From NCBI GenBank assembly GCA_001949185.1, contig BDGG01000001.1, forward strand, positions 1,236,263 to 1,300,262: a stretch of 64,000 bases of DNA, read 5' to 3'. Below, piece after piece: positions 15,172 to 45,247 of the stretch (its first letter is position 1; each line of letters starts with the position of its first letter). Origin of the DNA: Ramazzottius varieornatus (lineage: Eukaryota; Animalia; Tardigrada). The position numbers were made by a program, and so were the translations under genes. The notes beneath the pieces are model-generated. The model was not told where the DNA came from. It was given only the letters and a program-made list of their open reading frames with translations, and ran no database searches.

Positions 15172-15375
15172 AACTGCATTTCACGGTCTACCTCCATTGT
15201 AAAAGCTTGTAGACACAGACTCAAGAACGCGCCATCGTTTGGCTTTTACGACTGTGGGCAGAAAACTCAAGTATCAACCCATAAAAACATATCACACACA
15301 AACCCGAGTGCCCAACGGCAAAAACCTTAGCGAGCTTTCTGCTGAAGCAGCATCAAGCGCCATCTATCACAGCGT
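15172..15375. repeat. Non-coding 3' flank duplicated at ~18891-19100
   Basis: Near-identical ~200 bp blocks (tgcatttcacg...cccgagtgcccaacggcaaaaaccttagcgagctttctgctg...) downstream of copies 1 and 2. Confidence 0.9.
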
Positions 15376-15412
15376 CAGGCCCAAAACCCAATATGCTGTG
15401 AAGTCTGTCATG

Positions 15413-18400
15413 TCATTCTGACAAAACATCGCTCGCTGACACTTTGGCCGAATCCAGAAGACGACCTGAAGAATTCGCCCAATGATCTTCGGAATTTTTC
15501 TTACTTTTGCCAGGTCCTTCGAGAGGCGTTTTTCTTCGGGATATCACTTCTTTTGGCTCTAAAACAGAATACAATATTACTATACCACGGAAGCTCAGTA
15601 CGTACGAAACTATTCTGCTCGTACGTAAACCCTGGGCGATTTTCGTCTTCCTGTAATACCGCCGGTCTCGTTCTCGCTTTCGAGCCAGCTCTTTCTGGTA
15701 GGCAGCCAGCTCTTCGGACGTTAATGGTACTAGAAAAGAAAGGAAATCACCAAGTTGACCACCCAATAACACCAATAAGAAAACTGAGGCGTTTTGGCGG
15801 CTTACGTTCTTGTCGTAGTTTAAGGCGGTAAGAAGGTATGGATGTGCCGTTCTTATTTCTTTCCTCGACAGCGATACAACGAGCTGCTTCTACATCAGCC
15901 TCTGCAAGACAATTTGAATTAGCAGCTCGGAAAACAAACAGGGCAAGATCGTTATTCCCAGTGGCGCTGCTCCCAGCCAGCATTACTGTAAAACTGCGCC
16001 AGTTGCGAAAACTCGGTAAGACCTTTTTCCCACGTGGCGTATAGCTTCTCTAATATCTTCTCGAAGGATGCGCGACTTGGAAAAACAATCTGGTCGAGTT
16101 CGTTTGTCGAACTCACAGTTTTGAAGTTTTCAAACAACTTGTCCCATTCTTTGCTGTTTTCAGGCAATAATATTATTAAGAATTTTAATGCGCTGCTTGG
16201 AAATAGAACATCTGGTCAGAACCGCTTACCGTCAACGACATTGGTGGTTTCTCGGCGGGCTAGCTGCCAAGCGAACATCGGACCTTTTCCTGGTCCCCTC
16301 TTGCTCACTTTCTCGGGATCTGCAAAGGGTTTCCTGAACAGACAACTCCCAGCATCCAAACTCGACCATATTGAATTTCATTCACAGATCGCGTACCTCT
16401 TCCTGCTGCGATCAGTGTTTTCCTCCTCATGAGGGCATTCTTCTCACGGTTTCGTTTCAAGTATGCTTCGTACTGGGCCAGCTCTTCGGCCGTCAAAGGC
16501 ACTACGACAATTGGTCAGTTTACGAAATTAGACGCTTTATGGGATGAGACTTAAATGCATTGGACATACGGCCTTGTATGTACTTTTCGCGGACCAACTT
16601 CAGCAGCTTGTTGTTATTGGGAGCATTTCTCGCATAATAAGTCGCATTAGCCTCCCGCTTTCGTGCATCATAGGCCTCCCTCTCCTCCTCTACAAAATGA
16701 TCTCGTCTTGCTATCCGTGTGTCTAGCCGTCACTGGAGTACTCTACAAGATATTTTGTGCATGCGGCAAGAAAAGATGGGGTACGTACCTGTCATTTGTG
16801 CTAGTTTGTTCTTACGCCTCACTCGTTTTTCAAAGCTATGCTTCAGTCTATTCGCTTCTTCCACCTTCCTCTGCTCCAAGGTCCTTTCTAGGAAGCAGAA
16901 AAACCCAACATAACAGCAAAAAAGGGTACGAGAGGCCGGCAAACGGATAATTCGAGATCGTTTTTCCAACTGGCGCAAGCTGTCCTTAGTTCGGGCCTCA
17001 AGCTGCGCCACTTGGAAAACGATAACGTCGAGTTTCCCGAACGGCGCGCGTTCTCGTTGTCATCGGTTGAAAGCTGCGCCACTTGATTATAATGATCTTG
17101 CAATTCCGTTTGCCGGCCTTCCACATGAGAGGCGACCAGTTAATCCACATTCTTTTGCCTACCGTCACTTTCGAAGTGTTTCTTCTCCTCGTCCGTCATA
17201 TCTGAGAAAATCAAAGACCCACAGTCATCTACGATATTTCAGATACGTTGATCCAAACCAAAGCAAGAATTAGCTTACTCCCAGCCTTATATCGTGCATC
17301 TAGCCAATACCAGTCCTTCGTCTGTTTCCTTCTACGTCCCAACGGTTTCGCACATTCGTCAGTTTGCGGCTGGCGTTCTTCATTAACACTTTCTTCCACG
17401 ACCGTGATTTCAGAGGAACCGTCATCACGACAGCATTCTATGCCGCCATTTCCAATGGAACCAAATAACGAAGATTCTACATTGACCGGCAGCGCTTCCA
17501 TCTTCGTTCTTCGAGTGCGGAACACTCGCTTCCGTTTTGACGCGACTTTCTGAGCCATCTCAAGGACAATATTGTCAATATTGTTAACCTGCGGCAGCTC
17601 GGATCCTGGCCTTTTACAGCTTGCTAGCAGAGACAGCACCAATGCAGAAAGCTGATGGCTCTGAATGGCGCCACTGTTGGGAAGTTTGTTGTAGACCCGC
17701 AGTTCTTCTGAGGGAAAAATGTCTCGGACAGCGACCAGGTAGACGGAACCACGCTGCTGGTATGCGATCACATTGGCTTCCTTCCTACTGGAACACGGGC
17801 GAATGAACTTGATCCAGTTACAAAGGAAGTTGTCCCTCATATCGTACGCCTGCAAATAATGAAAAAAAATTCACAACGCGTCGGTAGTAGGCAAACTGAG
17901 CACTAAAAATGCGCATGTTCATTAGCGCAGCACTGATGGCGGGCCACCCAGCGTATGCTCACCGCCCGACAAATGGATCGTCTAACCAACAAAACTGCCC
18001 CCTTGGCTATCATCGAGTTCGCCTTTACCTGTAGTTCCTGCGCCTCTTCCGACCAGATGGTGTATCGCGGAGGGCCTTCTTTCAGTTCATACAGAGGAAC
18101 CAAAGGCGCGATGAGCGGCCCGAACAGCGTCAACGCTTCAATCTTCCGCTTTGCAATAACCATCTCTTCTGTCAAGCATTAATTTTCAACCCACTTATTC
18201 CATACATCAGACTGCAAAAGCTACCTTTTCTTGGTAGCTGTCCATCGAGTAGGCAAATAGCGTCTGGTAGTGAGGAGTAGGCCAGCGGATTGGGTGGCTT
18301 GTCAAAGATGATCCGCTTCACATCGGCATGCTCGTAACACGGTCCATCTAAATCCTCCAAGCACTTCTCACAACCTGCAGAAGACCGCTAATTTCGTTTC

Positions 18401-18554
18401 GTTTCGAAAATTTACCATGACGGTCACACTTACGTGTAGAGATGTCCAGAGAATCAGCCTCGGCCCCGATGGCGCTGACGGAGGCAACATTAGAGCTGGA
18501 CGGATCTGCCAACAACAAATCCCGCTCGCTCTGTAAAGGATTCTCCATGGCCAA
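15413..18554 (-). CDS. PRDM-like PR/SET protein copy 1 (apparently intact); zinc knuckle + PR domain + basic helical repeats, no C2H2 fingers
   Basis: CEKC-x7-CYEH knuckle, IIFDKPPNPLAYSSLP, TLFGPLIAPLV and CNWIKFIRP..ANVIAYQQRGSVY..RDIFPSEELRVY. About 11 exons join in frame, and the C-terminal junctions are all phase 1. Confidence 0.8.
15946..16092. repeat. Intronic inverted-repeat units (2), PRDM-like copy 1
   Basis: ccagtggcgct..tgcgccagttg and cacgtggcgta..tgcgcgacttg. Confidence 0.75.
16955..17099. repeat. Intronic inverted-repeat units (2), PRDM-like copy 1
   Basis: agatcgtttttccaactggcgca-N26-tgcgccacttggaaaacgat plus a second unit. Confidence 0.8.
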
Positions 18555-19128
18555 ACGGTGTTATCCAATGCGTCGAGGAGAGCCAGCGCTCTTCCACGGA
18601 TCTGTGGCAGAATCAACGGTAGTATTGTCGAAATATCGAACGAAAAACCCAGAGTTCAGCTTAGACTTCTACGGGAAGTGGAATGATTCGTACACTGCTG
18701 AAATAAGTAAAACCAGTAAAAAGAAGCACGCATGACATACCATGGTAAACACAAACATTACGTAAGGGAACATACAGTAACATAATTCTCAAGACGCGTC
18801 CGCGATGACGTTACTGTAATTATCATCGGATCAGTCATCTCCATTCATCGACCGATCCGTCTTCCGGTTTTCCCTATTTCAGCTTCCGTTTGCATTTCAC
18901 GATCAACCTCCCTTGTAAAAGCTTGTAGAGTGTAGACACGGACCTCAAGAATGCGCCATCGGTTGGGCCTTTACGACTGTGGGCAGAAAACTTAAGTATC
19001 AACCCACAAAACATATCAAACACAAACCCGAGTGCCCAACGGCAAAAACCTTAGCGAGCTTTCTGCTGGAGCAGCATCAAGCGCCATTTATCACAATGTC
19101 AGACACAAGAGCCAAAACCGAAGTCAAT

Positions 19129-21616
19129 CATATCATTTTGACAGATAACTCGCCTTGTTCAGAACTGGACTCTTCGGCCGAGTTCCTCGAACCATCTTCG
19201 GATGTCCTCTTGCGTCTGCCAGGCCCTTCGAGCGGTGTTTTCCTTCGCCATATCATCTCTTTTGAGTCTAGAAAGCGCAAAACAAGGTTGTCACACAAAC
19301 GAAGCTATGTACTTGCGCTCAAATGTGGCTCTGCTCGTACTTGAACCCTGAGCGATCTTCTACTTCCTGTAATATCGCTGATTTTCTTCTCGATTTCGAG
19401 CGAGCATTCTTTGGTAAGCAGCCTCCTCTGCAGACGACAACGGAACTGCAAAAGAAAGAGCATCATCGGAGGTTAAACCCAATGTGAAAACCCAATGTGA
19501 CAATGTCAGCCTTAAAATGAAGCGAAGTGCTTTGGCGGCTTACGTCCTTGTCGTAGTTTAAGGCGGTAAGAAGGTAGCCATCTTCCGTCCTTATTTCTTC
19601 TGTCGACAGGCACACAACGAGCTGCTTCCGCATCAGCCTCTGTAAGAAAGACCTTCTACCATCAGCAATATACAGCACGAAAGAACGGGTCGCCTACTTG
19701 TCATCTGTTCGACTTTGTTCCTCATCGTTATGTTGACTTTCAGTCTTCGAGCCTCTGCCTTCCTTCTCTGTTCAATCGTCCTTTCTAGAAAATGCAACAC
19801 CCCCACGATGATAACGGAGATGATGGTTACGGTCAAAATAGGTATTTACCAAACTGGAAATGGCTGAATTAGAACGAGAGGCCGACAGACGACAGCGGAA
19901 TGGAGGGTGTATCAGGTGGCGCACGATTCCTGCCAACAACAAGGGAAACTGCGCCACTTGGGATAGCGATCATCCCGAGACTGTCTGCTGGTCTGAACAA
20001 TATCGCTCATGGGAGTAACTTCACCAACCGTCGTTCTTAAAGCGATGCTTTTCCTCTTCATCATAACCAAGAATGAGCTCACCACCAGACTTGTATCGTG
20101 CGTTCAGTAGCCTCCATTCCACCATCTGGCCCTTCTTTCTCCTGCGAGCTTTGGGCTTGCCAGCTTCCGAATGACGTTCTCCAGCCACACATCCCTCTGA
20201 ACAAGTGGCTACGGACACTGAGCCACCAGAGACTGAGGCCTGCTCTTCCGGGGCCTCGACCTTCTTTGTTCTCCGAGAACGGATAATCCTTAGCCGTTTT
20301 CGGGGGACTTTCTCGACAACTTCAGAATCAACACTCGCAGCCTGATGTTTCTGACTTCTGCGAATTGAAAGAGCCATCAGCGCTGCTGTTCTCAGCTTTA
20401 CTGGAAATCATGGTTTCCGCTTCAAAGTGCGCCTGGATGTCCTTCGTTGTTTCCCCTTTCTTTGCTTCTCAGAACTGTTTTTGATAAGGCGCATTCCTCC
20501 GTTTTCGAGGCGGAAGTTCAGTGTCCATCTTGTCAACATGTACTTGTTGGCGGCTCTGAGTTTTTTGCTTGTTGTAGCTGGACAATAGAGACTGCACTAA
20601 AGCTGACAGCTGGTCGCTGGGGATGGAACAACTCCTGGGCAGTCTGACATATACCAGCAGTTCTTCTGAGGGAACAATGTCTCGGACAGCGACCAGGTTG
20701 ATGAAACCACGCTGCTGATACGCACCCACATTGCTTCTTTGATATTCGAAGAGGGTCGAACGAGCTTGATCCAATTACACAGAAAGTCATCACTCAGATC
20801 ATATGCCTGAAAGCAATCCACCAAACCTCAAACTAGTCGTGAGTCGGCAGGCCGCAGTCGATGAGGCGAAGGGGTAAACCAACATAAAACCGAAAAAGTT
20901 TAATCGAAAAACTTAGCAGGCCATGCGGTTGTTACCTTACGCACAGACTAAGTCTTAACATGGAGAGTCTTACGAGCAACAAACCCATTGGGCCGCCACG
21001 GTACTTTCGCAAATTCGCCCCATGGAACTCGCTACAGTTAAATTCCTTTCGAGACTGACCACTCATTGCTATGCCTAACATACTGTATATTACCTGTAGT
21101 TCCTGCGCTTCTTCCGACCACATTGTGTACCGCGGAGGTCCTTCTTCTAGTTCATCCAGAGGGACCAAAGGCGCGATTAGCGGCCCGAACAGCGTCGACG
21201 CTTCAATCTTCCGCTTCGCAAGAACCATCGCTGGTGTAGAGAACCATCTTTCAACACAGCTGCTCATTCACTAGACCAAACTCGAAACAGTACCTTTTCC
21301 TAGCGGTTGCACGTTGAGTAAGCAGAGATCGTCTGGCAGAGATGAATAAGCGAGAGGAATGGGTGCCTTATCAAAGATGATACGTCTAGCATCGGCATGC
21401 TCGTAACACGGTCCATCCAAGTCTTCCTGGCACTTCTCGCAGTCTTTGAACATTAGCACTTTCATACCGCTGTTGAACCACAATACGGCTGTCGTACTCA
21501 CATGTAGCGATGACCAAAGCATCAGCCTCAATCCTAACGACGCTGAAAGTGGCATCATTCGCACCGGACGGATCTGCCAACAACAAACCCCGCTCGCTCT
21601 GCGCCCCATCCTCCAT
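19129..21616 (-). pseudogene. PRDM-like copy 2, disrupted
   Basis: Same exon series as copy 1. One-base deletion in the PR domain (~20733, gaagcaatgtg), in-frame TGA at 20469-20471 and a further frame change near 20380. Confidence 0.75.
19910..19982. repeat. Intronic inverted-repeat unit, PRDM-like copy 2
   Basis: caggtggcgca-N26-tgcgccacttgggatagcgatc. Confidence 0.8.
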
Positions 21617-22374
21617 TGCTCAGCGATGCCTTCCAACGCAACGAGGGAAGACTGTACCACAGGGATCTGTGGTAGAGAGGCTCGCGGGGTGTCGAAGGGC
21701 TAGCCATCGGCTAGCAATCGGACATCTTCCTTCCGGAGCTGGAAGTGCATTGCTCATCAGTGCAAGAGTAAAAGCATTACCTACTAACCTGACATACACC
21801 ATGAAATTGCGTGACATACTGTTATACAAACCAGAGCCGGAAGTAAGGAAGTTAACAGTGCGTAGGTGTGATCGTACTAACTTGTCGAGATCCTGCGTTT
21901 CCTCAGTGCAGACACAGTACCGAAGACCTTACTTAAGTTCTTTAACCCCAGAAGAATATGCCAACAGCGAGAAAGCCCACCTGGAGGAGAACAGGCATGT
22001 CCCTCAATTGTGGACACTTCAAAACCAACTTTGAGCTGAACACGGCTTCTGGACCGATACTGTATGTCCCTTCCGGGTTCCGACGACATCGCGGTTGAGA
22101 TTGTCAACAACTTTGGGCTCTCATCGAAGTAAGTCTTCACAGTAGTGACAACATAATTATCCTGTTAGTTTTGCACACGGAGCTGTCTAACAGGGAAGAC
22201 CTTCCAAAGGTTTGTGCGTAAGTAGCAATATTAAAACGACAGGGGCGAGCGTGGAACACAGTATGTCATCACTACAAAAGCCGTCTACTTCACATTTTTC
22301 TACCTTTTCTTCTTCTTCGAACCGCTCTAGCGCAGAATCGGTGTCTCCGGAGGAGATCCTCCCATGGTATCTCC

Positions 22375-25272
22375 TCATTCTGTCATCTGCCAAGCGAAGT
22401 CCGGTTTGCGGTACGGCACACCACCGGGCTTGTGACATTTCATCGGCTCCGGATCTACAAAGAGTAACGCAAATCACCAATCGTGAACATGATTTCCCAA
22501 AGACTTTTCAAGTCTCGAAGAATACCTAAACCCTTGGCAATGCGCTTCAGCCTGCTCCTCCTGCGACTGCTCTCTCGCCCAAAGACCAAATGTTTCTCGT
22601 ACCGAAGCTGCTCCTCTGGCGTCAGCGGCACTGCATAACCGAGAGACGGATAGAATACTGAAAGTCTTCAAGTGTTGGTTGTTGACTGTTGATACTTACA
22701 TCCCAGCCGCAATTTACGGCGGAACGGCGGCGCGTAGCCAAGCGGTCCGGTTGATTTTTGTGGCGATGGCTCTTCTGGCTGTGGCTCTGCAACGACCCCA
22801 AAATTATTATCATGACCAGAGAAAGATACCTGGAAGGTCGGTAAACATACAAGATCGTCATTTCAAGTGGCGAACGTTTTCATCGTTTTTGGCTGGAAGC
22901 GTGTGCCTCTTGATACACTCGACAAGACAGTTTTCCCTAGTAGTGCACGTTTCGGTGTTATTAGCTGAAGGGGCGCGCCACGTGAGATAAAAAGCTTGTA
23001 CTGTAAGGTTTTTTTTGCCGGCCTCCCCAGTTAATCTTCTATTCTTCGCCGTAATCCTTCTTGAAAATATTGAAACGAAAAATAACTCAAGGCAGTCACC
23101 AGTGTGTTAATTACTGTGTGTAAACGACTTCAGTCAATTCAATTAAGCGTACTGCTTTATATTTGATTTGACAAATTTTTATGAAAACGATAATAACGTT
23201 TGCTTAATAAGAGTTAATAAACCTCCAGACGGACCTTCGACTATTCCGGCGGCTCGCCGAGCAGCAATCTGCCAGTCGAACAACGGGAATTTCTTCCTGC
23301 CGTAATTCTTATTCGGTTCAGCAGCTATATCAAACAAAAGACATATCAGAATGGATAAGTACACAAAGCAAAACGAAACATGCGGGGAAGCGGACTTACG
23401 TTTCCCTTTCGCAATTCTATCTTTGGTTCTGCGTTCGGCTGCCTTCTCACGAGAGAAAGCTAGTTTCTTTTCCCGTTTGAGCTGTTCTTCCGGCGTCAAA
23501 GAAACTACAAAAGCAAGTCATAAATCACTGTGCAATAACTCAGTGTGCTCTCGCAAAACTCTGACTGACTCACGTCCTTCTAACAGTTTTTCGCGGATCA
23601 CATTTGGACGCTTGCTGTTCCTCTGGTTTTCGATCCGCTTTTTGGCCCGCCATACCTCCCTCTCTTCCTCTGAAAGAGAAAGCTCCATCAATTATTTAAG
23701 CCGCATTCCCGTTTAACTGGAAATTTATCCGCACGTACCAGTCATCTGTGCCAACTTTTCTTTTCTTCGCAACCAGTACTTTGACCTGTCAGCCTTCCCT
23801 TCGACTTGTCGCAGCACCTTCTTCTCGTTCCGTCTACGCTTTATCGGTTTCGAAGTCTCTCCCTCCGGAAAGCTTCCATCTATTACATTCACATTTTCTT
23901 CCAAAGCTGTCCCTTCTCCGGGACGGTCACTCGAAGAGGACAGAGTGCTGCTACTTTCCCCTACCCAGGAAACCGACTCGAGCAACCCCTGATCCTTCGA
24001 GGATTCGACCTCCTTCGATCGTTGGGAATGGAAAAGTCGTTTTCGTTTTGGGGGAACTTTTTCAACCATTTCCGCGGGACACTCTTCTGACTCCTGACCG
24101 TAACCCATGCCCTTCTCAGCTTTCGAAACTTTCGCCTCAAAGATTTCCTGAATGTCATTCTCGCCCTCTACTTTGTCAGCTTCGTTTAGGTGCTTTCGTT
24201 TCCGAGCTGTCCGCCGCTGTCGAGGCGGAAGTTCCATCTCCACCTCATCGACCTCTGCTTGTTCGTCGTTCTGGACTTCTCGTCTATTGTAACTGGACAG
24301 CAGAGACTGTACTAGAGCCGACAGCTGGTCGCTAGGAATAGCTCCACTCTTGGGAAGCTTGATGTAGACGCGCAGTTCTGTGGACGGAAGAATGTCCCGA
24401 ACAGCGACCAAGTAGACGGAGCCGCGTTGCTGATACGCGATCACGTTGGCTTTCGTCTTGCTGATGGCAGGTCGGACAAACTTGATCCAGTTGCACAGGA
24501 AGTCGTCGCTCAGATCGTAGGCCTGCAAATAATTATGGAAATAGGAACGAGTCGGGAAGTCGGTGTACAATGAGCCAGGACACACGACAGCGACATGATG
24601 GTAGGCCATGGGTGCACGTTTATCTCATACCCACACAGACAGTCTAACGAGCAAACGTTCCCATTGGCCTGCCACAGCATCCCTGCGATAGATTAGCCAT
24701 GAAGATGTGGGACATCGTAGGAGAAGTCAACTCGAAGGCTGGCCACCGGATTCTTTACCTGCAATACACGTGTCTCTTCTGACCACATGGTGTATCGTGG
24801 AGGGCCTTCTTTCAACCCGTCCAGAGGGACCAACGGTGCAATCAGCGGACCAAACAGCGTCCACACTTGAATCTCCTGCTTCGCAAAAACCATCTCCTCT
24901 GCAAAACGGACACTCTATACGCAAACATTACGGAGTTAAAAAGAAACTTCGTCACCGTTCTTCGAAGGATGTACACCGATGATTCGCAGCGCTTCGGGCA
25001 GGGAGGAATACGCCAGCGGAACGGGTGGCTTGTCAAAGATGATCCGCTTGACATCGGCATGCTCGTAACACGGGCCATCCAAATCCTCCAAGCACTCCTC
25101 ACAGCCTACAACACCCAGACTTCTGTCGCAAGCAATTTCTCAAGGTACTGCGGAAGCACTTACACGTGGAGATAACCGAGATATCCGGTGGAGCGACAGC
25201 ATTCAAGGGAGTGATGGACGAGATAGCAAAACTCGTCCCTGGTTCATCCGGACCTTCTGTCGTCCTCCCCAT
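22375..25272 (-). CDS. PRDM-like PR/SET protein copy 3 (apparently intact)
   Basis: CEEC-x7-CYEH, TLFGPLIAPLV and CNWIKFVRP. Mini-exons SLTPEEQLKREKKLAFSREK.. and PLTPEEQLRYEKHL.., ending PYRKPDFAWQMTE*. Start codon tentative. Confidence 0.78.
22852..22990. repeat. Intronic inverted-repeat units (2), PRDM-like copy 3
   Basis: agatcgtcatttcaagtggcgaa..tgtgcctcttg and tagtagtgca..cgcgccacgtg. Confidence 0.7.
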
Positions 25273-25724
25273 GTTGAACAAACAACGCGGAGACACTCAG
25301 GCTGGTATCGGGAGTCTCTTCTGTAGCAGTTCGAAGGCCAAAACGTTTCAGGAGAAAATGAAGGAACGATCCGAAGCAGTAGAGTAAAAGACGAGCAGCT
25401 CCTTGTCGAAAATCGAAATAATGGGAAGCACAGCATAATGCATGACATAACATGATAATGTAATGACACACATAAATTCATAGTTCTTCAATCGACCGGA
25501 AATACGTCATCGCGGTTCAGTTGTTGGCGGTTATAAGTCTGCGTCGAGAAATCGATTCATTCGGGATTGAATCATCTTCTGCTTCTTCGGATTTTACTTT
25601 ATTACAGAGTATTCAACGGTTTGCGGGTATACAACCTAGTACAATCGACAGAGCGCTTGAAATATGCCATCTCACAAAAGTCACACATTTGACACTAGAG
25701 CACTGGGCCGCAGGTCCAAAAGTA

Positions 25725-26107
25725 CGTTGTAACTGTGCTGCGCACATTAGCAGGGTGCTGTACGCTGTGATCTGCTGCACAACTTTCATGCCCAGTGGCT
25801 AAGCAGCTGTGCTGCAGATGCACGTTGACCTGGTGCAACTGCGCGGAACGCCGATGTATTGACGAGGTTTGTAAATCAGTCAGCGAAATCGATAGTCAAC
25901 CTGGAGAACGTTGGCCTAAAGTACGGCAAAGCTGAGACGGCTGACGTTCGAATGCCCAAAAACTGTAAATTTTGTTAGGTTTCAGTAGGTGCATCTGCGC
26001 GGTAGTCTATGGCTTTCTGCTGTATGCTGTGCTGTGCCGCACAAATTTCGTCAATTCACGCGCTGCAACTGTGCTGCAGCACAGCACAGCTACAGTACAG
26101 CGCAACG
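25725..26107. repeat. Degenerate inverted-repeat element rich in GCTGTGCTG
   Basis: gcagatgcac (~25813) pairs with gtgcatctgc (~25990), and the termini cgttgtaactgtgctg / cagtacagcgcaacg are imperfectly complementary. Confidence 0.4.
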
Positions 26108-27743
26108 CATGCGACCAGATTCCGTGCTCTATTTGACACCTCCTCTGAGTTTTACCAGTGTGGGTTGACCATAGTGTAAAATATGCAAAGAGCAATAATA
26201 ACGAAAACGTCGAACAACGGTCTGAACACTGATTGGAGTAGAGGCAGCAGAAGCTCGACACGCCCATGGGATCGGACGACGTCACGCTTTACTAAAGAAT
26301 AAATTGAAAAACAAGTAACAAAATGTAGGAAACAAACCTGGTTCATGGTACGAGATCGCAGGTGAATTCTATCCTCAGGTTTCCTGACAACTTTTTTGTG
26401 GGTTTTCGAGAGCTTTTCAACCTGAGTGCAACGCTTGGAGTAGAAATACAACCGACATTTGAGGAAAAACTGAGCAAGTCCGAAGATCACGTTTGAACTA
26501 CCGCAACAGTCTACAGAGCCAAAATTCTCTTCTTTCCAAATCTTGAGGATAGTTTCCGAAGCGATCGGGGTAAAAGTCATGACAGGGTGTCCCAAAATGG
26601 CGTCATCGAACTTTGACCGGAAGACGTCCTCGAGATCGCGAATGAATGAAAAGGAGGACGGCGTTCTATTACGCAGCTAACCACGGTCTAGACTTTCAAC
26701 CCACTTTGCGATTATGTACGAATGAGTGCCGGATTTGGTCACGCGTGCGTTACTAGGAAAATGGATTCATTGATGTTGCGAAAGGGATCCAGTTCTAAGT
26801 CGGACGGTTGGGGAACCGCCGAAACTCGATACGAGATTGTAACGAGTATTGTCACCTCGGGGCACCGTGTTTCTCGGATTACCAACCCTCGAGATGATCT
26901 GGAGAAAATGATTAATGAAGTTGTAAAAACAAATGAAACATCACGTACTTTCTTCGCCGCGGACTCCATCAAATCTGGAAAATGATCTTATTGGTCAAAA
27001 GATATTTATTTCCACCAATCAAACCACTGTCTAAACCATTAAGCTCCGGCCCAGCGAAATGTTTTGTGGTGCGTGAGAGCTTATGCTTTATAGCGTCAGT
27101 GCGACAAGCACATGCCTACACCGCACATGCACAAACATAAGCAGAAAGTACGTACGTGCTTGTTACTCTCTGGCCGAAATCTCCTAGCTGTCATGCACCA
27201 CGATACATGTGCCATTCGGCGACGCGCACATGCATACAACCAGGTTAGCGGGATATGACTCGGTTTTGATGTCCACTAACCTGCAACGGAAACACCCACA
27301 GAGCGGAGCAGAACAAAGGGAAGACTCCAGGGAAGAGTGAGCAGCAGAACAAACGGCGACAGAAGAGGCCAGACAGACGACAAGAGCGATAAAGGTGACG
27401 ATGGGACAAGTCGAGGCTTCTTCGAGAAGCCTGCAAGAAACAGACGGTTAACCAGCAGATGGTCCACTCTCCACCGTCAAAGGCTCGAACCAAGCACTTA
27501 CTCGGTAAACAGAGGCAGAGGGATATAGTGGCATACAGGGGACGAAGATAGCAAGGGATGCCGGAGAGCAGGAAGATCTCGTAGCCTGCCGGTAATCTGA
27601 TGCAATACGCCATCAGCGCTAATCAATAATAAAAAACTTGACCAAACCTATCTGCGACATAGCTTTGTTGCCGTGTTCGATGAAAGCTGGATTTAGCTGT
27701 TGATTGATGGAACATTCAACACTATGGTCAACCCACACTGGTT

Positions 27744-30700
27744 TTACTCTTCTTCCGTTTCGTTTTCTGCAGCATTTCCATCGAGCTCTTCGGATGAACT
27801 CCTCGACTGATGGTCGGCCGCGTTCTTTTCTTCTCCTGTCAACTGCCAAGCAAAGGGGGGTTTCCGGTAAGGCGCACCACCGGGCTTGTGATATTTCATC
27901 GGCTCTGGACCTGATTCATACAGCAAAAAAAACACTTTGTCACTGACTGCGCTGTATAATCGATTTTATTTTTCCTCATGCCTGTGAGAGTCGACCTTTG
28001 GCGATTCTTTCCAGTATATTTCTTCTCCTGCCAGCTGCTCGACTTCTTGCAACTGATTCTCCAGCGTAAGCTGCTCCTTCGGCGTCAGCGGAACTGTACC
28101 ATGAAAGAGAAGGAAGTAAACACAATCCCACCGATCACACAGGAAACGTGCCGCTTTTAGCAACTTACTTCCCTCTTTGGCTTTCCTTCGAATCTTGCTG
28201 ATGTTTGTCACCCTCTTGATATTCGCGGCTTTGCACTGTTCGGTTCGCCGTGTCCATCTAGCACGATTCCGGGCGAGAAGCTCTTCTCTTGATACTTGCT
28301 CTTCCGGCGTCAAGGGTGGTATAAGAATTTCATGATCTAGCTTATCCAAGCCCAGAAACATTTTTCGCATCCATTTTCACCATTTGCCCTTACTTCCCGC
28401 CATCGCTTTAGCCCGTAACTTCGCCCTTTAACCCAGACCTCTTTTTCTTTCTTTCAGGTGCTGACTTTTTGTCTTCGTCCGTCGCTTTCTTGTTCTGTTT
28501 CCCTTCTAGACGAATAGAAATGTTAAACTATTAAAATTTAAATGGGATTTCGGCAGACAGACTCGATAAGAACGTTTGCTCAAGTGACGTATGTTTCCGG
28601 TGCTATCATTCGGACGCGTGCGCCACTTGAGCAACCTATCTTGGCGAGGCTGAGGGACCTAACGTCGCGTACTCTGTAATCATAGGATTGTTTGCGGAAG
28701 GTTCCTCTTCTGTCTCGACCTCTAATTCTGCGAGAAAAGACGTACGACACCGGTCCAAACAGTAAGAAACCAGGAAGCGCGCGCTCAGCTAGTGAGAACA
28801 CACTCTTCGCAACTTTGACCATTTTCCTGAGCCTTTTCGTGTCTTTATTGGCTTTTCGGCGTAGTAAAAGATGTTTTTCTCGTCGGGCTTCTTCTTCTGA
28901 GGTTAGAGGTACTGCAGAAAAAAAAAGTTCCAGAACAGACAAAACTGTTACCACACGAAAGCTACGCTGGCTGGAATAGGCACTTACGTCCTTGTACGAT
29001 TTTGGCCCTGATCGCCAATGGATGCTCCTTCAGTTTTACATATCTAAGCTGCGTTCCACTAAGATCTCCCGGCTTTCATCGGCTACGAGGAAACATGTTG
29101 ACAGTAGCGTTAAGCAGTCCACAAACAGCGCTCGTCCTGTACCGAGTTACAAGATCGCTTTTCCAAGCGGCACATTCTTACGGCAAATAACACTGCAAAC
29201 GTGCGGCACTTGGGGAAATAACCTTGTCGAGTTCACTAGTTGACCCTCCCACCCATATACCTGCGCCAGGTGCACATCGTCTTTCTATTGTTAGTCTCCG
29301 AGCCGCATTGATCTCTTTCTGCTCCAACGTAATGGCTGAATAAAATAACATGAAATAGTACCAAGCAGCGAACTGCAGTCTACTGTTCTCCCTACCACAT
29401 AAAGTGTACCTACCGCGAGTCTCGAAGTCCTGCTTTTCCTCATCCGTCATTCCTAAAATTAACAAACTACCGTACATTATGTAACATAAAATGGTCACGA
29501 TACGATAACTCAGAAAAAGTAACCTCACCTCCTCAATAATACCGTTCCCTCAAGTTGCGCCATTCGGTCAGTTCCTTCTTTGTCCGCCGAACCCTTTTCG
29601 ACGACACCACGCTTCCGCACTCCTTCCTCAACGATATTCTGCTTGTGAACTCCGGCACGTCTGGCAAGGAAGCTGCACCCTCACTTTCTGTAGGCTCATA
29701 TTGGAGAATGTCTGTGGGCTCTTCGGAAGCGGGCACCTCTGTCCGCGATATCTCGTCCGACGTTTCGGGTTCCTTCTCAGTTTTCTGGTTCAGTTTCCTG
29801 AGTTTGCTTTCTTTCCGATGAGAACGCGCGCAGTGTTCCGGATCGATATATCGGACGTATTGCACGGGCGGGCCGAATAGCTCGTCGTACACCTCAGCAC
29901 AGCCTTGTGGCCTGTTGACGAAAACCCGCAGTTCTGTCGACGGGGCAATATCTCGGACACTGAACAGGTAGATGGAACCATGTTGCTGGTACGCTATTAC
30001 ATTGACTTCTCTAAAGTTGGATGACGGCCGGACGAACCTGATCCAGTTGCAAAGGAAGTCGTCGCTCAAATCGTAGGCCTGAAACCAAGGAAGAAAAAAG
30101 GAGACCTGGACGATCAAGATCGTTTACTCCAAGTAGCGCATTCTGTCAGCCAATGAGACTGAAAACATGCGCCACCTGGAGAAACGGTCTTCTCGAGTCT
30201 ACTGAAGCAGCTGTTAATCTTTACATACATATAGCTTTTCCGTTTCCTCTGACCAAACATAGCGAAGAGTTTCCGCAAGTATTTCGCCCATACGAAGTAA
30301 GGGTGCGATTAAGGGTCCAAATAATGTCCATGCTTTGATGTGTTCCTTCGCGATTTATCGTGTCTCCTGCAATGAAAAATCTGAGTGGCATTCCGCTCTG
30401 CCAGTAACGGCCGAAAACGCACCTTTGTCCTCCTCCAGCACTTTAGTAAACTCGTATCTTTGAGAAGAATCGGGTACAGAAGAATACGCGAGTGGAATAG
30501 GTGGCTTATCGTAAATGATGCGTTCAACATCGGTGTGCTCGAAGCATGCTCCTTCTAGCATCTCCTCGCATTGTTCACAGTCTGCAAGAAATGCCACGAT
30601 ATTTCTGTTCATGCTGCCTGGCAGACCAGTAATTTGATAGTACTCACATAAGGAGATATTTACGGGAATCTGGTTAGCCATCACAGGCTTCAGGACAGCT

Positions 30701-30801
30701 TCCTTGTTTCCGGAGGTTGGCACCGTTGGATCAGCCTTCCGATTACTCACGATGAACGTTCCAACTGGGTGCACCATCTGGACACTCGCGGAGGCGCTCA
30801 T
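27744..30801 (-). pseudogene. PRDM-like copy 4, disrupted
   Basis: CEQC-x7-CFEH, WTLFGPLIAP and CNWIRFVRP. One-base insertion near 30355, TGA at 29533-29535 and a frameshift in the ~29040 exon. Three PLTxEE modules and a PYRKPPFAWQL last exon. Confidence 0.72.
28569..30190. repeat. Three separate intronic inverted-repeat units in copy 4 (28569-28641, 29152-29225, 30117-30190)
   Basis: caagtgacgta..tgcgccacttg; caagcggcaca..tgcggcacttg; caagtagcgca-N27-tgcgccacctg. Confidence 0.75.
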
Positions 30802-30989
30802 TCTGGATAGACGGGGCTTCTGCCATGCTGCTGGTAACCCACCATGTTACTCATGCGATAAAGTCGATTATCGTCCCGTCGAGTGCGGTGTCTCTTCTGT
30901 GGAACATGTTCAAAAAGGAGGAAGGAAAGACGCGATATCCGGATCGACGGAGGACATCAGTCTGGGCATTAGGTGTTCTTCCGTGTAAT

Positions 30990-31877
30990 CAGTACTCTCC
31001 GATGGTGAGGAATGCAAGAAAGGTGCGGGTACAAGGGTAGAGTACAAAGTTCCATCCAGAACCCTACCAGAGTGGGCGAAGCGTTCAACGCGGGTACTCA
31101 GACAAGAAAAGCCCAAGCGTGCCGATGGCAAGGTGGAGTGCAAGAAGGTTCCCCGGAAGCGCGTTCGCCGCGACGACAGTAACAAAGGAACTACAGACAC
31201 CATCAGTGCTAAAGCTCCTCTTCCGCGCCCTTTGAAAGACATGGAGGAGGAAATAGGACGGAAGCTGATCACAGGAAGTATGCATCAAATCCTTTTACAA
31301 GCTTGGTTAGTGACTTTAGTATTCAAACGGGAACAATGGTTGCAGTACCACGGACGCCCGAAGAGCAGCTGCGTCGCGAACAGGATCTGGTGCATCGACG
31401 TGCAAACAATGAGAAGTACAGGAGAAAAGACAGAATAGCTAAGGGTCGTGGTAAGTCACTGCCTCACCTTCTGTAATATATTCAGGAATGGGCTCGATCT
31501 CAACAACGGGGCATCGTAGTCGTAGCATACACCTCCACCGCTGTTGAGACCGAAGTGGGAACTGGCCGAAGGAATCAAACCAGATCGCTGTTCAAAGTGA
31601 CGCAGACTCTCATTGTTGTTGGCTGAGAGTATGCGTTACTTGGGAAAACGATCTTCTTGAGTTTGCTCGCCCATGTCTCAGCTGAGAATCTCCGTGTCCC
31701 TCACGGGATTTCGTTTCCCATTGATCATTTTAGGACGACCTTTTTCCGATTTACGTATTTCTTTTGATTGTAGATACTGAACCAGCGAAGATCGATAACC
31801 CAGGCTCGTTCAAGAAAGCACCGTTGTTTTCATGGCAGCTAGCGGAACAAGACAGTTCATCAGCCTCGTCCAAGTAG
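30990..31877 (+). pseudogene. Inverted fifth member of the PRDM-like family: linker and repeat exons only, no PR domain
   Basis: KVPRKRVRR linker, exon 31346-31450 PRTPEEQLRREQDLVHRRANNEKYRRKDRIAKG, last exon 31774-31877 KKAPLFSWQLAE. An inverted-repeat unit lies in its intron (31582-31654). Confidence 0.7.
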
Positions 31878-32110
31878 GCTGTCGTTGGAGATCTCGAAAT
31901 GATCGATGGATCGGACATATCCAAATCCCTCGCGATAGAAGCAGATCATGTCTTTCTCGATGGCGCAAGAGTCTTTTAGTGCGAAGTCCAAATCTGCTTC
32001 AGAATGGTCCATACCGACCGGGTATAGTTTCTGAGACGTGCTTCAAATTTATTCGTCGTCGATCCGTGTTTCCTATCGCTTGTGTGTACCATGTTTGTGC
32101 TGTTTTGCTA

Positions 32111-32549
32111 CAAGGGAACGAAGGTCGGTCTGAGAGTCCAAAACTCTTCCAAGTTTTTCCATCGAAAATACTCGGTCCTGACTACTGTTTCAAGGTAGTT
32201 TCAACTGCCGGTAACAATCTTCTGGCCTAAGAGAAAACTACGAATGCGTGGAGCTCTCTTGAAACCACNNNNNNNNNNNNNNNNNNNNNNNNNNNNNNNN
32301 NNNNNNNNNNNNNNNNNNTTTTTGTTGCTAGAGACGTCATGTTTCGGACGATACGAGACCGAGCAAACGTTGAAAAGTCAGACGTCCCACAGTGGTTTCA
32401 AGAGGGCTCCACGCATTCGTAATTTTCTCTTAGGCCAGAAGATTGTTTCCGGCAGTTGAAACTACCTTGAAACAGTAGTCAGGACCGAGTGTTCTTGATG
32501 GAAAAAGTTGGAAGAGTTTTGGACTCTCAGACCGACCATCGTTCCCTTG
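32111..32549. mobile_element. MITE/foldback element with ~160-bp TIRs and TA target duplication, spanning an assembly gap
   Basis: TA|caagggaacg...gaaaccac (to 32268) is the near-perfect reverse complement of gtggtttc...cgttcccttg|TA (32393-32549). N-run in between. Confidence 0.75.
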
Positions 32550-33315
32550 TAAGCAGCATTCGCGTGATTTGTACAGAGATCTTTTACGTATGGTGGGAGG
32601 TGGGACCGTTCTCATGTGATTTTTTAGGTTTTTTATGTGTACAATTCCACACACATACAGAACCCCGAATTCTTGTTGTTTTCAAACGAAGGTTAAATAA
32701 GCCTGAAAATTTCTCTTCGGTACCAAGGTTGGAATCTTCCACGACCAGATTTTCCGCACCGAAAACTTTTAGAATTATAATGAGATCTCCGAACCGGTCT
32801 TGTTCGAGGTTTCGCTTCGTGAAGGGCTAATAAGAAAACTATGTACGTCTCGTCCAACCTCCGAAATGCCGAACTCTCGCGGCGTGGTAGAAGAAAGCAT
32901 CCTTATATGCGTGGCAGCTGGCCCAGTCAACGATGAAACCGACAAGCGAAGCTGGTCGCGATGACCTAACCAGCTGCACAATTGACCGAATGACTTACCT
33001 TTCTCTTCTTCTAGCTCACTGCATTTCCGATGTTTGATACCGTATGGTACCGTATCACTGGTATGATTAATAACCAGAAAGAAAACGGTTCGCCGAATAC
33101 ACTCAAGCCAGACATGATCGATGGTCCAAAAGTGCAGTACGTACGCAGGAAATACATGGTATTATATTCAGGAATTCAAAGCTAATGAGATGAGTCGTAG
33201 GATGAACAGATGAAACTACTGTAACGTGAAACTATGAAGTGCAACCACGATCTCACCATTGTTTCAGCTCGGCTCTTTGCTTGGTTAATGTTCTGGCGGT
33301 TTGTGAATGGCGGCT

Positions 33316-33765
33316 TTACCAGCCCCTGTATCCAACCCCAACAATGTCACCATTCTGGACTCTTGACGCATCTGGCGTGACAATGCATCCAAGGCTGTCC
33401 ATGTTCGTCACCCGACGGAGCCAGTTTGTCGACGGTTCGTGCACTTGTAAAGCCGTACGCCCCATAGCGTTGTGACCGATGGGATTTAGGTTGCATCTGT
33501 AGATGTCCGATTCCGTCTTTCTGCCGCAGTTGCTGGTTTGATAAAGGCCGGGTGGAGCTGGTCCTCCAGGGGTGGGTATCCCCAGGAGACGAATGGTATG
33601 ACTTTTTAGCCCTGGATGAATACTAACCCCGAATGGCGATAGGTAAGTGGGAGTACCGGAATGAGCCGCCGAGTTACAGTCCGGCTTTGTCGATGGGCAA
33701 AATGTGCCATTGTTCGAGGACATAAAATCCTTCGAGAAGATGAAGTCCGGAGTGACTTTAGACAT
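33316..33765 (-). CDS. DUF2778/Tlde1-like L,D-transpeptidase-fold protein (149 aa, no coding introns)
   Basis: Motif order AHSG, GPAPPGLY, RCNLNP, GRTALQVH-x14-SLGCIV matches the AFSG / GPxPxGxY / GR..F.IH / SxGCI pattern I recall for DUF2778. ATG in accATG context. Confidence 0.7.
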   Translation of the reverse strand: MSKVTPDFIFSKDFMSSNNGTFCPSTKPDCNSAAHSGTPTYLSPFGVSIHPGLKSHTIRLLGIPTPGGPAPPGLYQTSNCGRKTESDIYRCNLNPIGHNAMGRTALQVHEPSTNWLRRVTNMDSLGCIVTPDASRVQNGDIVGVGYRGW

Positions 33766-43144: not shown

Positions 43145-45247
43145 TTATCCCAGAAAATCGAACAGTTTCGACCAAAAGCCGGAAGGTCTTTCGGTAGTTG
43201 TGATTAAACCCTTATTAAGATAAGAATTGGCGTCACGAACTGCCGGTGGTGAAGCGCCACCTGAGCTCACAGTATTTGTGCTGGGAACGATCACATTGGG
43301 TGACGGGTTGGGTGTTGCTTGCTGGAGACTGTTGACTGTTTGGCCGTCCAGCGCATCGGTGCACAGGTAAAAGTTTCGGGCGAATAGGCTCAGCGTAGCC
43401 AGATGCTCAATCTTGCACATGGTGCCTGCAGTCTTGGGGACACATTTGGACAGATCAGGAGAGAACTTGGCGCGGCAGATATCCGAGCTGCCGAACATGG
43501 AGTGTGGTGGGTCCAGTTTGAGTATTTGGTCGGGCTGAACGGAAAAGTCGATGCATGGCAGTACTTCCGGGTTGGCAACGTTGGGACCTTGCGGCAGACA
43601 GGCTTTGGCGGCCTGTACCACATCTGCAAAACACAAACTGGATCATCATCGCCCGCCACGAATCAGCCAGCCCGCAAAATTCAAACTGATTAGCAATAAT
43701 TATTTCTGAAGATATATATAATTTACTGTACCTCGCAGATCGTCGGTGTCGGAACTTTTGTTGGAATACAAGGAGAGCACGTGTCGCAGTGATGTCATGA
43801 TGGGTTCTTCTTGTACAACTGTATTGACCGCCAGTTGCGCCTGTAATGGGAAGAAAGCCACCATGAATCTAATTCGACAGCACCGGAAAAAAGAGCGGGG
43901 CTTACCTTAGAAACTTTGATGTTGCAAGTGTTCACATCGAATCCGGTTGGTATCGTGAAAATATCCGCGGAGCTATTATAGTTTGCATACGCGTCCACCG
44001 AAGCTGTCAGGAGCTCCGTCATGAAATTGGCCTTCTCCTGAATCGTTGTCTTTGAGATATTGTCATTGGCTAAGAACTCCAGCGCCATGTTAGGCAGTTC
44101 TGCAAACGGCAGTTCTCGGTTCCACCTGGCGATCATACAGGCATCCACGTTCTTCTGCGGCAAGGCCGCTACCGCCGCTGTAGCCGGAGCAACTTGTCCC
44201 GGCGCAACAGGTGCAGTTCCGCTGCTGGTGTTGGTCGCAGTGCCGCCGACAATGTTGTTGTTGACAATGACGGTGGTGTTTGTTCCTCCTGGGTAATATT
44301 GACTGTATCGGTCACGGTAAGGTACATAACCTCCACCATAGCCTGGGTATCCATACCCATAGCCATACCCGAATGGACTGTACAGAGAACCGAGCGCATG
44401 TCCGAGATAGTAACCACCGACACCTGCTGCCAGACCGGTGGCAATGAGGGAGCCGGTACCGAAACCGCCACCACCGAAACCACCTCTTCCGTAATAGCCC
44501 CCTCGTCCATAGGAATTGTAGGTGTTGTACGTTGGAGAGTAGACGACTTTGGAGGGAACCGAAGAAGAAGCCGATGGGGTGTTGATTGCAGGCCGACTAC
44601 CGAAACCTGAACAAAGTAGAATAATTGGATTGTTGTTTGGGAAAACCAAGCTGGTTTGTAGTTTATACCTGATCTGGAGGCGCCACCTACTCCAGTGTAT
44701 CGGTTCCGAAGTGAGTCCAAGCCGCCGCCAGATGGCGCAGACGATCCGTAACGAGTTGCACCCGAACTACTACCGAAGATGCCCCCAGTACTCGACCCGG
44801 AACCATATCGAGTGCCAAGTCCCGAGGAACCGTAAGTGTTACTGCCGTAACGTGTGAGAGCGGCACCACCGAGTGCACCGGCACCAACTGCTCCTGCGCC
44901 CACTGCGGCGCCTGATCCGAGAGATGAGCCATAGCGAGTACCGCCACCGAAACCGCTGCTACTGCTGGGGCTGAATCGTGAGCCGGAACTGTAACCGAGA
45001 CCAGATGGCGCAGAGGAACCGAAACGGCTGGAGGAACTGAGACCGCTACTTCCACTGCCTACCCATCGACTACCGCCAATACGTCTTGAAGAGACGGATG
45101 AGATCAGTATACATATCACTGTAAGTCCAAAACACAGCACACAGGTTAGATTGACATAACGGACATTCTTTGATGTTTGGGCTTACCAGTAAAGCTGAAT
45201 ACCCGTTTTCTAGTGGAGAGAATTGGTCGATTCCGCTCAGGACCCAT
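43145..45247 (-). CDS. Secreted Gly/Ser/Tyr-rich low-complexity protein with Cys-rich C-terminal domain
   Basis: Signal-like VFSFTVICILISSVSS, TRYGS repeats, GYG repeats, hydrophobic GLAAGVGGYYLGHALG, several Cys-containing downstream exons. Confidence 0.75.

What the first reader, a model, noticed from the sequence alone, without database searches (positions are those of the whole stretch)
15413..31877. Tandem PRDM-like family in which zinc fingers are replaced by exon-encoded 'PLTxEE-basic helix' modules
Seen: four paralogs with a zinc knuckle and PR/SET domain but no C2H2 motif. Their C-termini are strings of ~35-aa exons such as PLTSEELAAYQKELARKRERDRRYYRKTKIAQG, PLTAEELAQYEAYLKRNREKNALMRRKTLIAAG, SLTPEEQLKREKKLAFSREKAAERRTKDRIAKG and PLTPEEQLRYEKHLVFGRESSRRRSRLKRIAKG, interleaved with 'FAWQ' exons. 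Known: PRDM proteins almost always target DNA through C2H2 arrays. Inference: a lineage-specific chromatin-regulator family with a new, variable nucleic-acid-binding repeat resembling bZIP basic regions. The fast divergence could reflect conflict, as seen for PRDM9 or KRAB-ZNF genes.
Basis: partly seen in the sequence, partly recalled or inferred. Interest (0 to 1): 0.85.

Follow-up and report, generated by a model that had tools for sequence, protein, structure and literature searches.

The report
Tardigrade PRDM-like genes with helix-cassette tails
A small gene cluster, so far seen only in the tardigrade Ramazzottius varieornatus, joins a PRDM-type chromatin domain not to zinc fingers but to a string of short exons that each encode one positively charged helix; two copies are intact, the rest are decaying, and what the helices bind is unknown.

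Summary
The window is Ramazzottius varieornatus scaffold 1.

**What is there**
- It holds four minus-strand copies of a zinc-knuckle + PR/SET gene, and no C2H2 finger anywhere in the 64 kb.
- Only two copies are intact: G1 = RvY_00429 (591 aa) and G3 = RvY_00432 (581 aa).
- G2 is a transcribed pseudogene.
- G4 has a frameshift, a premature stop and a broken module.
- A fifth gene on the plus strand has no PR domain.

**Evidence for the exons**
- Spliced transcript contigs from four studies confirm the whole 12-exon G1 chain.
- Every intron after exon 1 is phase 1.
- The tail is built of 39-120-nt cassette exons.

**What the module is**
- AlphaFold2 gives one 28-residue helix per PLTxEE exon. 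PLTxEE reads as a helix N-cap and A-x-G as a C-cap.
- The tail is basic (pI about 10).
- The module matches no Pfam family, bZIP included.
- A profile search of 1.84 billion proteins found it only in this window.

- The PR domain is closest to PRDM10 and PRDM4, not PRDM9.
- The tail evolves faster than the PR domain (dN/dS about 0.34-0.46 against 0.13-0.16) but shows no sign of positive selection.
- The nearest paralogs, on contig 5, carry a THAP domain.

Nucleic-acid binding is plausible but untested. The scan had already noted the phase-1 cassettes on this same window.

The parts
15250..18617 (-). G1 = RvY_00429 (P0004, 591 aa), intact and expressed. CDS 15416-18548. Exons: 18432-18617+, 18225-18372 (knuckle), 18028-18168 (PR a), 17279-17848 (PR b plus linker with KRKR), then the tail cassettes.
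   Evidence: Spliced contigs from 4 studies, with one 2031-nt contig spanning all exons. Frame open, introns phase 1. Identical to the public model.
15413..17201 (-). G1 tail exons: 17163-17201 (MTDEEK, 39 nt), 16789-16887 (99), 16570-16689 (120), 16397-16501 (PLTAEE module, 105), 16230-16319 (FAWQ, 90), 15806-15901 (96), 15625-15729 (PLTSEE module, 105), and the last exon, which runs to the stop at 15413-15415.
   Evidence: Predicted helices with pLDDT about 70-83, one per module exon.
19039..21616 (-). G2 = RvY_00431 (P0003, a truncated 203-aa model): a transcribed pseudogene. Big exon 19850-20805 is frameshifted. Module exon 19341-19445 carries an in-frame TAG. Only four tail exons remain.
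22375..25272 (-). G3 = RvY_00432 (P0002, 581 aa), intact. Model blocks, trimmed to whole codons: 25162-25272, 24957-25103 (knuckle), 24759-24899 (PR a), 23740-24522 (PR b plus linker), 23575-23670, 23401-23502 (SLTPEE module), 23236-23322 (FDWQ), 22701-22787, 22527-22628 (PLTPEE module), 22378-22455 (FAWQ, then the stop).
   Evidence: Public model mapped to the window. Canonical GT-AG and phase 1 at the tail-cassette junctions (23740 to 22455).
27744..30801 (-). G4 = RvY_00436 (P0001, 345 aa) plus a separate tail model (P0006, 154 aa): a decaying copy. It has a +1 insertion in PR exon a (about 30340), a TGA at about 29533-29535 two codons before the conserved donor, and a frameshift inside the module at 27991-28091. 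Module exons lie at 28804-28911 and about 28215-28316.
30825..31877 (+). G5 (P0005, 213 aa): an inverted gene model without a PR domain. It has a KVPRKRVRR stretch, one PRTPEE module (31348-31449) and an FSWQ exon (31773-31874, then the stop). The model's 20-nt first intron looks like an artefact.
25696..26131 (.). 436-bp interspersed repeat between G3 and G4. It is 90.6% identical, in inverted orientation, to a copy just downstream of the contig-5 paralog.

Best explanation
This is a cluster in which copies arise by duplication and then decay. So far it is seen only in Ramazzottius. The genes form a zinc-finger-less branch of the PRDM family whose PR domain is closest to PRDM10 and PRDM4.

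**Shown**
- Two copies are intact, and G1 is directly shown to be transcribed.
- Each intact protein has, in order: a short acidic N-terminus; a C-x2-C-x7-C-x2-H knuckle; a PR/SET domain; a 115-170-aa low-confidence linker with a KRKR stretch; and a basic C-terminal tail (pI 9.8-10.4).
- The tail is built from 6-8 phase-1 cassette exons.
- Exon duplication, deletion and decay change the cassette number between copies.

**Predicted**
- Each PLTxEE exon folds as one helix of about 28 residues. T-x-x-E acts as the N-cap and A-x-G as the C-cap.
- Pro/Gly-rich exons carrying a conserved K-x-P-x-F-x-W-Q motif separate the helices.

**Inferred**
- The protein is nuclear.
- The basic helices hold it on DNA, RNA or nucleosomes by low-specificity electrostatic contacts.
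- The FxWQ motifs may dock a partner.
- The PR domain, which has Phe where PRDM9 has a catalytic Tyr (as recalled from the PRDM9 literature, not aligned here), as in PRDM10 and PRDM4, acts mainly as an interaction module rather than an active methyltransferase.
For: - Organism and public models.
- PR domain: Pfam hits over the cut-off. Best solved relatives are PRDM10 (4.7e-12) and PRDM4 (1.2e-7), and the NW..F.RP...N..AYQ block aligns.
- No C2H2 finger.
- Splicing: GT..AG joints in contigs from 4 studies for G1 and G2. Open frame and phase-1 introns. Canonical sites at the G3 tail cassettes and the last two G5 exons.
- Decay of G2 and G4.
- Helices: two AlphaFold2 runs place H416-443 and H513-540 in G1 and H431-458 and H525-552 in G3, exactly inside the module exons, at pLDDT about 70-89.
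- Charge.
- Constraint: T3, E5, E6, L14 and R18 are invariant across 7 modules although dS is above 1. dN/dS is 0.13 for the PR domain and 0.34-0.46 for the tail.
- Restricted distribution.
Against: - Nothing was measured for binding, localisation or catalysis.
- The AlphaFold2 runs used an alignment of only two paralogs. The PR domain itself came out at low confidence.
- Reads were laid only on G1 and G2. G3 rests on the public model and on splice signals.
- dS is saturated, and only one intact pair could be compared.
- 'Ramazzottius only' rests on protein databases and a 34-position profile. No other tardigrade genome could be searched at the DNA level.
- The contig-5 sister genes have a THAP domain, so the tail need not be the device that targets the protein.
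Confidence: 0.6

Rival explanations
1. One reading: the cassettes are a new sequence-reading DNA-binding array. It functionally replaces the C2H2 fingers and diversifies under genetic conflict, as in PRDM9 or the KRAB zinc-finger genes.
For: The helices are basic and repeated, the cassette number varies, and there are no fingers. Tail dN is 4-5 times that of the PR domain. The tandem cluster turns over.
Against: No match to any DNA-binding profile. Tail dN/dS is about 0.34-0.46 (up to 0.61 for the two PLTxEE exons), below 1. The PR domain is PRDM10/4-like, not PRDM9-like. The sister paralogs carry a THAP domain as a ready DNA binder. Half the copies are decaying rather than diversifying.
Confidence: 0.15
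2. The tail is a weakly constrained, charged spacer or a nuclear/nucleolar localisation tail with no specific ligand. The cassette structure only reflects easy exon duplication and loss.
For: G1 and G3 are only 44% identical in the tail. Cassettes are lost in G2 and G3 without breaking the frame. Neither the ESM Atlas nor Foldseek finds any similar fold or family.
Against: Five positions are invariant and the A-x-G end is kept across modules although dS is saturated. The FxWQ motif is conserved in G1, G3, G4 and G5.
Confidence: 0.15
3. The helices and the FxWQ motifs form a protein-protein platform. They either drive oligomerisation through amphipathic helices or recruit a cofactor. Targeting comes from the partner.
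For: A hydrophobic stripe runs through the first half of each module (positions 7/8, 10, 14). The short F-x-W-Q motif is conserved in the linkers.
Against: There is no heptad repeat over the basic half. No partner is known. No complex prediction was run, because no partner could be named.
Confidence: 0.08
4. The whole cluster is non-functional remains that are merely transcribed.
For: G2 is transcribed although broken. G4 is broken in three places.
Against: G1 keeps an open frame over 12 exons and G3 over 10. PR-domain dN/dS is 0.13.
Confidence: 0.02

Closest known systems
PRDM10 / PRDM4 (with PRDM15; the zinc-knuckle PRDM subfamilies)
   Same: A zinc knuckle sits directly before the PR domain. 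These are the best solved-structure matches (3ihx at 4.7e-12, 3db5 at 1.2e-7). The NW..F.RP...N..AYQ core is shared.
   Different: There is no C2H2 array at all. The C-terminus is a cassette-exon array of basic helices. Orthology was not tested by a tree.
PRDM9 / PRDM7
   Same: A knuckle plus PR/SET domain, and a tandemly duplicated, fast-changing C-terminal repeat.
   Different: PDB match is only E = 0.15-0.55. No KRAB or SSXRD, no fingers, and no signal of positive selection.
PRDM11 (from my own knowledge: a PR-domain protein without a classical finger array)
   Same: A PR domain with a non-finger C-terminus. PDB match 3ray at 3.3e-4.
   Different: No similarity outside the PR domain was seen. 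The tail repeat here has no counterpart.
THAP + knuckle + PR paralogs on contig 5 of the same genome (G000:C5:2857773-2877754)
   Same: 43-50% identity over the knuckle and PR. Downstream, on the same strand, are 'DMTxEEKAAF + basic' segments that resemble the MTDEEK exon and the modules here.
   Different: They have an N-terminal THAP domain, and their PR domain lies in a single exon. A profile built only from the window's modules does not detect their tail segments (6 bits or less), so homology of the tails is not shown.
bZIP basic regions and arginine-rich helical motifs
   Same: A short Arg/Lys-rich helix. Some modules read L-x-R-N-R-E-x-N-x3-R-R-K.
   Different: No profile match. The Asn is not conserved. 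No leucine zipper follows. The acidic, capped N-terminal half is not a bZIP feature.
Repeat proteins with one exon per repeat, such as titin PEVK or Treacle (from my own knowledge)
   Same: One repeat unit per symmetric exon, so units can be gained, lost or skipped in frame.
   Different: The sequence and the protein context are unrelated.

Membership tests
PRDM family | PR-type SET domain | tested here: met
   PF21549 scores 62.8 bits on P0002 and 45-51 bits on single exons, against a cut-off of 27. There are PDB matches to PRDM10, 4, 1, 11, 5 and MECOM.
PRDM family | C2H2 zinc-finger array C-terminal of the PR domain | tested here: not met
   A regex scan of all six frames of the 64 kb finds no canonical finger. 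Pfam finds none in P0002. The G1 transcript chain ends in a stop without any finger exon.
PRDM4/10/15-type subgroup | Zinc knuckle directly N-terminal of the PR domain | tested here: met
   C-E-x-C-x7-C-x-E-H is conserved in G1-G4. This is a pattern only; no profile exists for it.
PRDM4/10/15-type subgroup | Orthology of the PR domain, shown by a tree | tested here: inconclusive
   Only the ranking of PDB E-values is available: PRDM10 4.7e-12, PRDM4 1.2e-7, others 9e-5 or weaker. No phylogeny was possible, because no animal PRDM set could be fetched.
PRDM9/7 | KRAB and SSXRD domains, a PRDM9-like PR/SET domain, and a finger array under positive selection | tested here: not met
   No other Pfam domain is present. 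PRDM9 chains score E = 0.15-0.55. Tail dN/dS is about 0.34-0.46 (up to 0.61 for the two PLTxEE exons), below 1.
bZIP | A basic region that matches the bZIP profile, followed by a leucine zipper | tested here: not met
   No bZIP_1 or bZIP_2 hit at E <= 10 on the exons or on P0002. The predicted helix stops at A-x-G after about 28 residues and a Pro/Gly linker follows.
THAP-PRDM-like paralogs of this genome | N-terminal THAP domain | tested here: not met
   PF05485 has 19 hits in the genome and none in this window. Two hits lie directly 5' of the contig-5 copies.
ER/K single alpha helix | A long, stable, isolated helix with regular i/i+4 Glu-Lys/Arg pairs | not tested
   Only the charge counts and the helix prediction are available. 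The split into an acidic half and a basic half does not look like a regular ER/K pattern.

The most novel reading that the evidence does not exclude
The one-helix-per-exon cassettes are a new modular reader of nucleic acid or chromatin. Its specificity would be tuned by gain, loss or in-frame skipping of phase-1 exons.
Probability: 0.12. Interest if true: 0.75.

Novelty: new variant of a known kind. Interest (0 to 1): 0.4.

Why it matters
PRDM proteins are almost always described as a PR domain plus C2H2 fingers. Here is an expressed branch that has dropped the fingers and carries an undescribed exon-modular helical tail. Its nearest paralogs carry a THAP domain. Together they suggest that in this tardigrade the knuckle + PR unit is being recombined with different partner modules.

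If the helices bind DNA or nucleosomes, they would be a simple new tethering module. If they do not, the locus is still a clean example of exon-cassette evolution and of gene duplication and decay. The public records call these proteins only 'hypothetical' or 'SET domain-containing'.

Tried and rejected
- **bZIP membership.** No Pfam hit at E <= 10.
- **ESM Atlas, C-terminal half of P0002.** Best score 0.83 and TM 0.30 or less, so nothing usable.
- **Foldseek of the G1 model against the PDB.** No match at E <= 0.001. The model as a whole has low confidence.
- **Homologs in other species.** Three word-based protein searches returned only Ramazzottius proteins. The length window and the 5-residue-word requirement limit these searches.
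- **Module profile against 1.84 billion representative proteins.** Only the four proteins encoded by this window were found.
- **Module profile against the window's own genome.** Only this cluster was found, plus the contig-5 segments after they had been added to the profile, which is circular. The window-only profile gives them 6 bits or less.
- **Positive selection.** Not seen, and dS is saturated.
- **Literature.** No paper mentions the RvY locus tags, or Ramazzottius together with 'SET domain'. The Prdm survey PMC4760075 turned up no mention of tardigrades in the passages searched.
- **Joined spliced sequence.** Whole-protein steps used the database's own records P0002 and P0004. dN/dS was computed exon by exon. 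One script joined the G1 exons in memory only to track the reading phase, and it printed per-exon translations.
- **Complex prediction.** Not used, because no partner is claimed.
Full report
**Where we are.** The window is G000:C1:1236263-1300262 of a 55.8-Mb, 200-contig assembly. Proteins encoded here are identical to records named Ramazzottius varieornatus RvY_00429, RvY_00431-2, RvY_00432 and RvY_00436. So this is the tardigrade R. varieornatus. An earlier scan note had already called the genome a tardigrade.

**The observation.**
- Comparing all stop-to-stop pieces of 14-33 kb with each other shows four collinear minus-strand copies: G1 about 15.4-18.6k, G2 19.0-21.6k, G3 22.4-25.3k and G4 27.7-30.8k. 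A plus-strand fragment lies at 31.3-31.9k.
- Their large exons hit Pfam PRDM2_PR at 45-51 bits, and the full G3 protein at 62.8 bits, against a cut-off of 27.
- All four copies keep a C-x2-C-x7-C-x2-H knuckle just upstream.
- A six-frame scan of the whole window finds no canonical C2H2 finger.
- The quoted PLTxEE peptides are at the stated places. They are flanked by AG acceptors and GT donors that leave one base of a split codon on the upstream exon and two on the downstream one.

**Transcript evidence.**
- I laid assembled contigs of four runs from four studies on 15250-21249. The tool could only guess that these runs are RNA. However, the contigs skip 15 listed stretches that all read CT..AC on the plus strand, which is GT..AG on the minus strand. 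They are therefore transcript-derived.
- One 2031-nt contig carries the whole G1 chain: 18432-18617, 18225-18372, 18028-18168, 17279-17848, 17163-17201, 16789-16887, 16570-16689, 16397-16501, 16230-16319, 15806-15901, 15625-15729 and 15250-15558.
- Read in the PR frame, this chain is open from an ATG in exon 1 to a stop at 15413-15415. Every intron after exon 1 is phase 1.
- The chain equals the public 591-aa protein P0004.

**State of the other copies.**
- G3 is the public 581-aa P0002, whose model already contains the cassettes. Its tail-cassette junctions are canonical and phase 1.
- G2 is spliced and present in three of the four runs. Its 956-nt big exon changes frame twice and meets stops, and its module exon reads ...YYRK*KIAQG. 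It is a transcribed pseudogene with only four tail exons.
- G4 has three defects. There is a 1-nt insertion near the start of PR exon a. A TGA sits two codons before the donor that G1 uses. Its third module is split between two frames.
- The public models for G4 reflect this decay. RvY_00436 reads PR exon a in the wrong frame and stops at the TGA, and the tail is a separate 154-aa model.
- The plus-strand module and FSWQ exon belong to a fifth model, P0005 (213 aa). It has no PR domain, and its 20-nt first intron looks like an artefact.
- So the cluster holds two intact genes, two decaying ones and one fragment.

**Anatomy of the intact proteins.**
- G1 and G3 align exon for exon. Identity is 71-79% in the knuckle and PR exons, 37% in the linker and 44% in the tail.
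- G3 lacks the stretch from ...YWL to ...RRK of G1. That is an in-frame loss of the end of the big exon, the 39-nt exon and most of the next one. Cassette number therefore differs between copies.
- The tail has pI 9.8-10.4 and a net charge of +18 to +25. The PLTxEE exons carry 24-35% Lys + Arg.
- Across seven modules T3, E5, E6, L14 and R18 are invariant, and most modules end in I-A-x-G.
- Between modules lie Pro/Gly-rich exons with a conserved K-x-P-x-F-(A/D/S)-W-Q motif. It occurs in G1, G3 (twice), G4 and G5.

**Structure.**
- Two AlphaFold2 runs were made, each on an alignment of only the two paralogs. They give low confidence for the PR domain but pLDDT of about 70-89 for the tail.
- Each module exon holds one helix: H416-443 and H513-540 in G1 (exons at aa 413-446 and 510-543), and H431-458 and H525-552 in G3 (exons at aa 428-461 and 522-555).
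- The helix starts right after P-L-T and ends just before the Gly.
- From general knowledge of helix capping, T-x-x-E is a capping box and a terminal Gly is a C-cap. I therefore read PLTxEE as a structural N-cap rather than a recognition motif. This is an inference.

**What the module is not.**
- Pfam gives nothing for the exons or for the whole protein at E <= 10, bZIP included.
- The ESM Atlas and Foldseek give nothing usable.

**Distribution.**
- A 34-position profile of the seven modules, run by HMMER over 1.84 billion representative proteins, finds four proteins at E <= 0.001. All four are encoded in this window.
- In the window's own genome the same profile finds only this cluster.
- Three word-based protein searches find only Ramazzottius proteins.
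- These searches have limited reach. No other tardigrade genome could be searched as DNA, so 'Ramazzottius only' is provisional.

**Relatives.**
- Against solved structures the PR domain matches PRDM10 (4.7e-12) and PRDM4 (1.2e-7) best. PRDM9 chains reach only 0.15-0.55.
- The aligned core has Phe in the ...NW-x-x-F-x-R-P... position, as in PRDM10 and PRDM4.
- From my own knowledge PRDM9 has a catalytic Tyr there, and PRDM10 and PRDM4 are not established methyltransferases. I infer that catalysis is doubtful, with low confidence.
- The genome has at least 17 PR loci. The closest are three copies on contig 5, at 43-50% identity over the knuckle and PR.
- Two of these copies have a THAP domain directly 5' on the same strand. 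The typical C-x2-C...C-x2-H and ALPTIFP features are visible in the open frame.
- One copy has four 'DMTxEEKAAF + basic' segments 3' of the PR domain. These look like the MTDEEK exon and the modules here. The window-only profile scores them at 6 bits or less, so tail homology is suggested but not shown.
- No THAP domain is present in this window.
- This matches an earlier scan note on THAP-PRDM-like genes, and it weakens the idea that the helices simply took over the fingers' job.

**Rates.**
- Exon-by-exon Nei-Gojobori counts between G1 and G3 give dN 0.131, dS 0.98 and a ratio of 0.13 for the knuckle and PR.
- For the tail they give dN 0.591, dS 1.73 and a ratio of 0.34. LWL85 gives 0.16 and 0.46.
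- The tail changes 4-5 times faster at the protein level but stays below 1.
- dS is saturated and there is only one intact pair, so this test is weak. It gives no support for conflict-driven evolution.

**Reading.**
- Shown: an expressed, finger-less PRDM-type gene pair with an exon-modular basic tail, sitting in a cluster whose other copies are decaying.
- Predicted: one capped helix per module exon.
- Inferred: nuclear location from the KRKR stretches; low-specificity binding of nucleic acid or nucleosomes by the basic helices; a possible partner for the FxWQ motifs; and a mainly non-catalytic PR domain.
- Rivals are a sequence-reading array under conflict, a loosely constrained charged tail, a protein-protein platform, and a wholly dead cluster. 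Only binding and localisation experiments can separate them.

**Novelty.**
- The gene models are public but unnamed. I found no paper on them.
- The kind of thing is known: PRDM genes, exon-cassette repeats, and gene clusters that duplicate and decay.
- The combination and the module itself are not described.
- I rate it a new variant of a known kind, of moderate interest.

**Limits.**

Noticed in passing
window 25696-26131 and L005:4401-4836 (G000:C5:2879401-2879836): A 436-bp repeat, 90.6% identical and inverted, lies between G3 and G4 here and just downstream of the contig-5 THAP-PR paralog. It could be a mobile element linked to the spread of these clusters.
   Followed up: partly
G000:C5:2857773-2877754 (L001-L005): Three paralogs of the knuckle + PR unit. 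Two have a THAP domain directly 5'. One has four 'DMTxEEKAAF + basic' segments 3' of the PR domain.
   Followed up: partly
window 31799-32227 (+) and 32433-32681 (-), around the N run at 32269-32318: The two flanks of the 50-N assembly gap are inverted copies of each other (69% identity at the protein level over 59 aa). This is either a palindromic repeat or an assembly artefact at the gap.
   Followed up: no
window 18533 (loose ends in runs X1 and X5): Contigs leave G1 at 18533 and continue with letters that match the 5' region of G2. This looks like the assembler crossing between paralogs, not a real junction.
   Followed up: partly
window 486-1459 (+) and 53166-54195 (-): Two sets of open frames share long similar stretches (…HA.NRKK.REWT.ERCEEYI.KLQKL…). 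By eye they look like two copies of a DDE-type transposase. Not tested.
   Followed up: no
window 43795-45140 (-): Overlapping long open frames rich in Gly, Ser and Tyr (GYGYGYPGYGGGY, SSGxGSRYGSS). This may be a low-complexity structural protein. Not tested.
   Followed up: no
window 33316-33765 (-): An open frame that another first-stage note flags as a possible bacterial-type effector homolog. Not examined here.
   Followed up: no
window 16859-17192: A low-depth contig in run X1 runs unspliced across the intron between the 39-nt and 99-nt exons of G1. This is probably pre-mRNA or intron retention.
   Followed up: no
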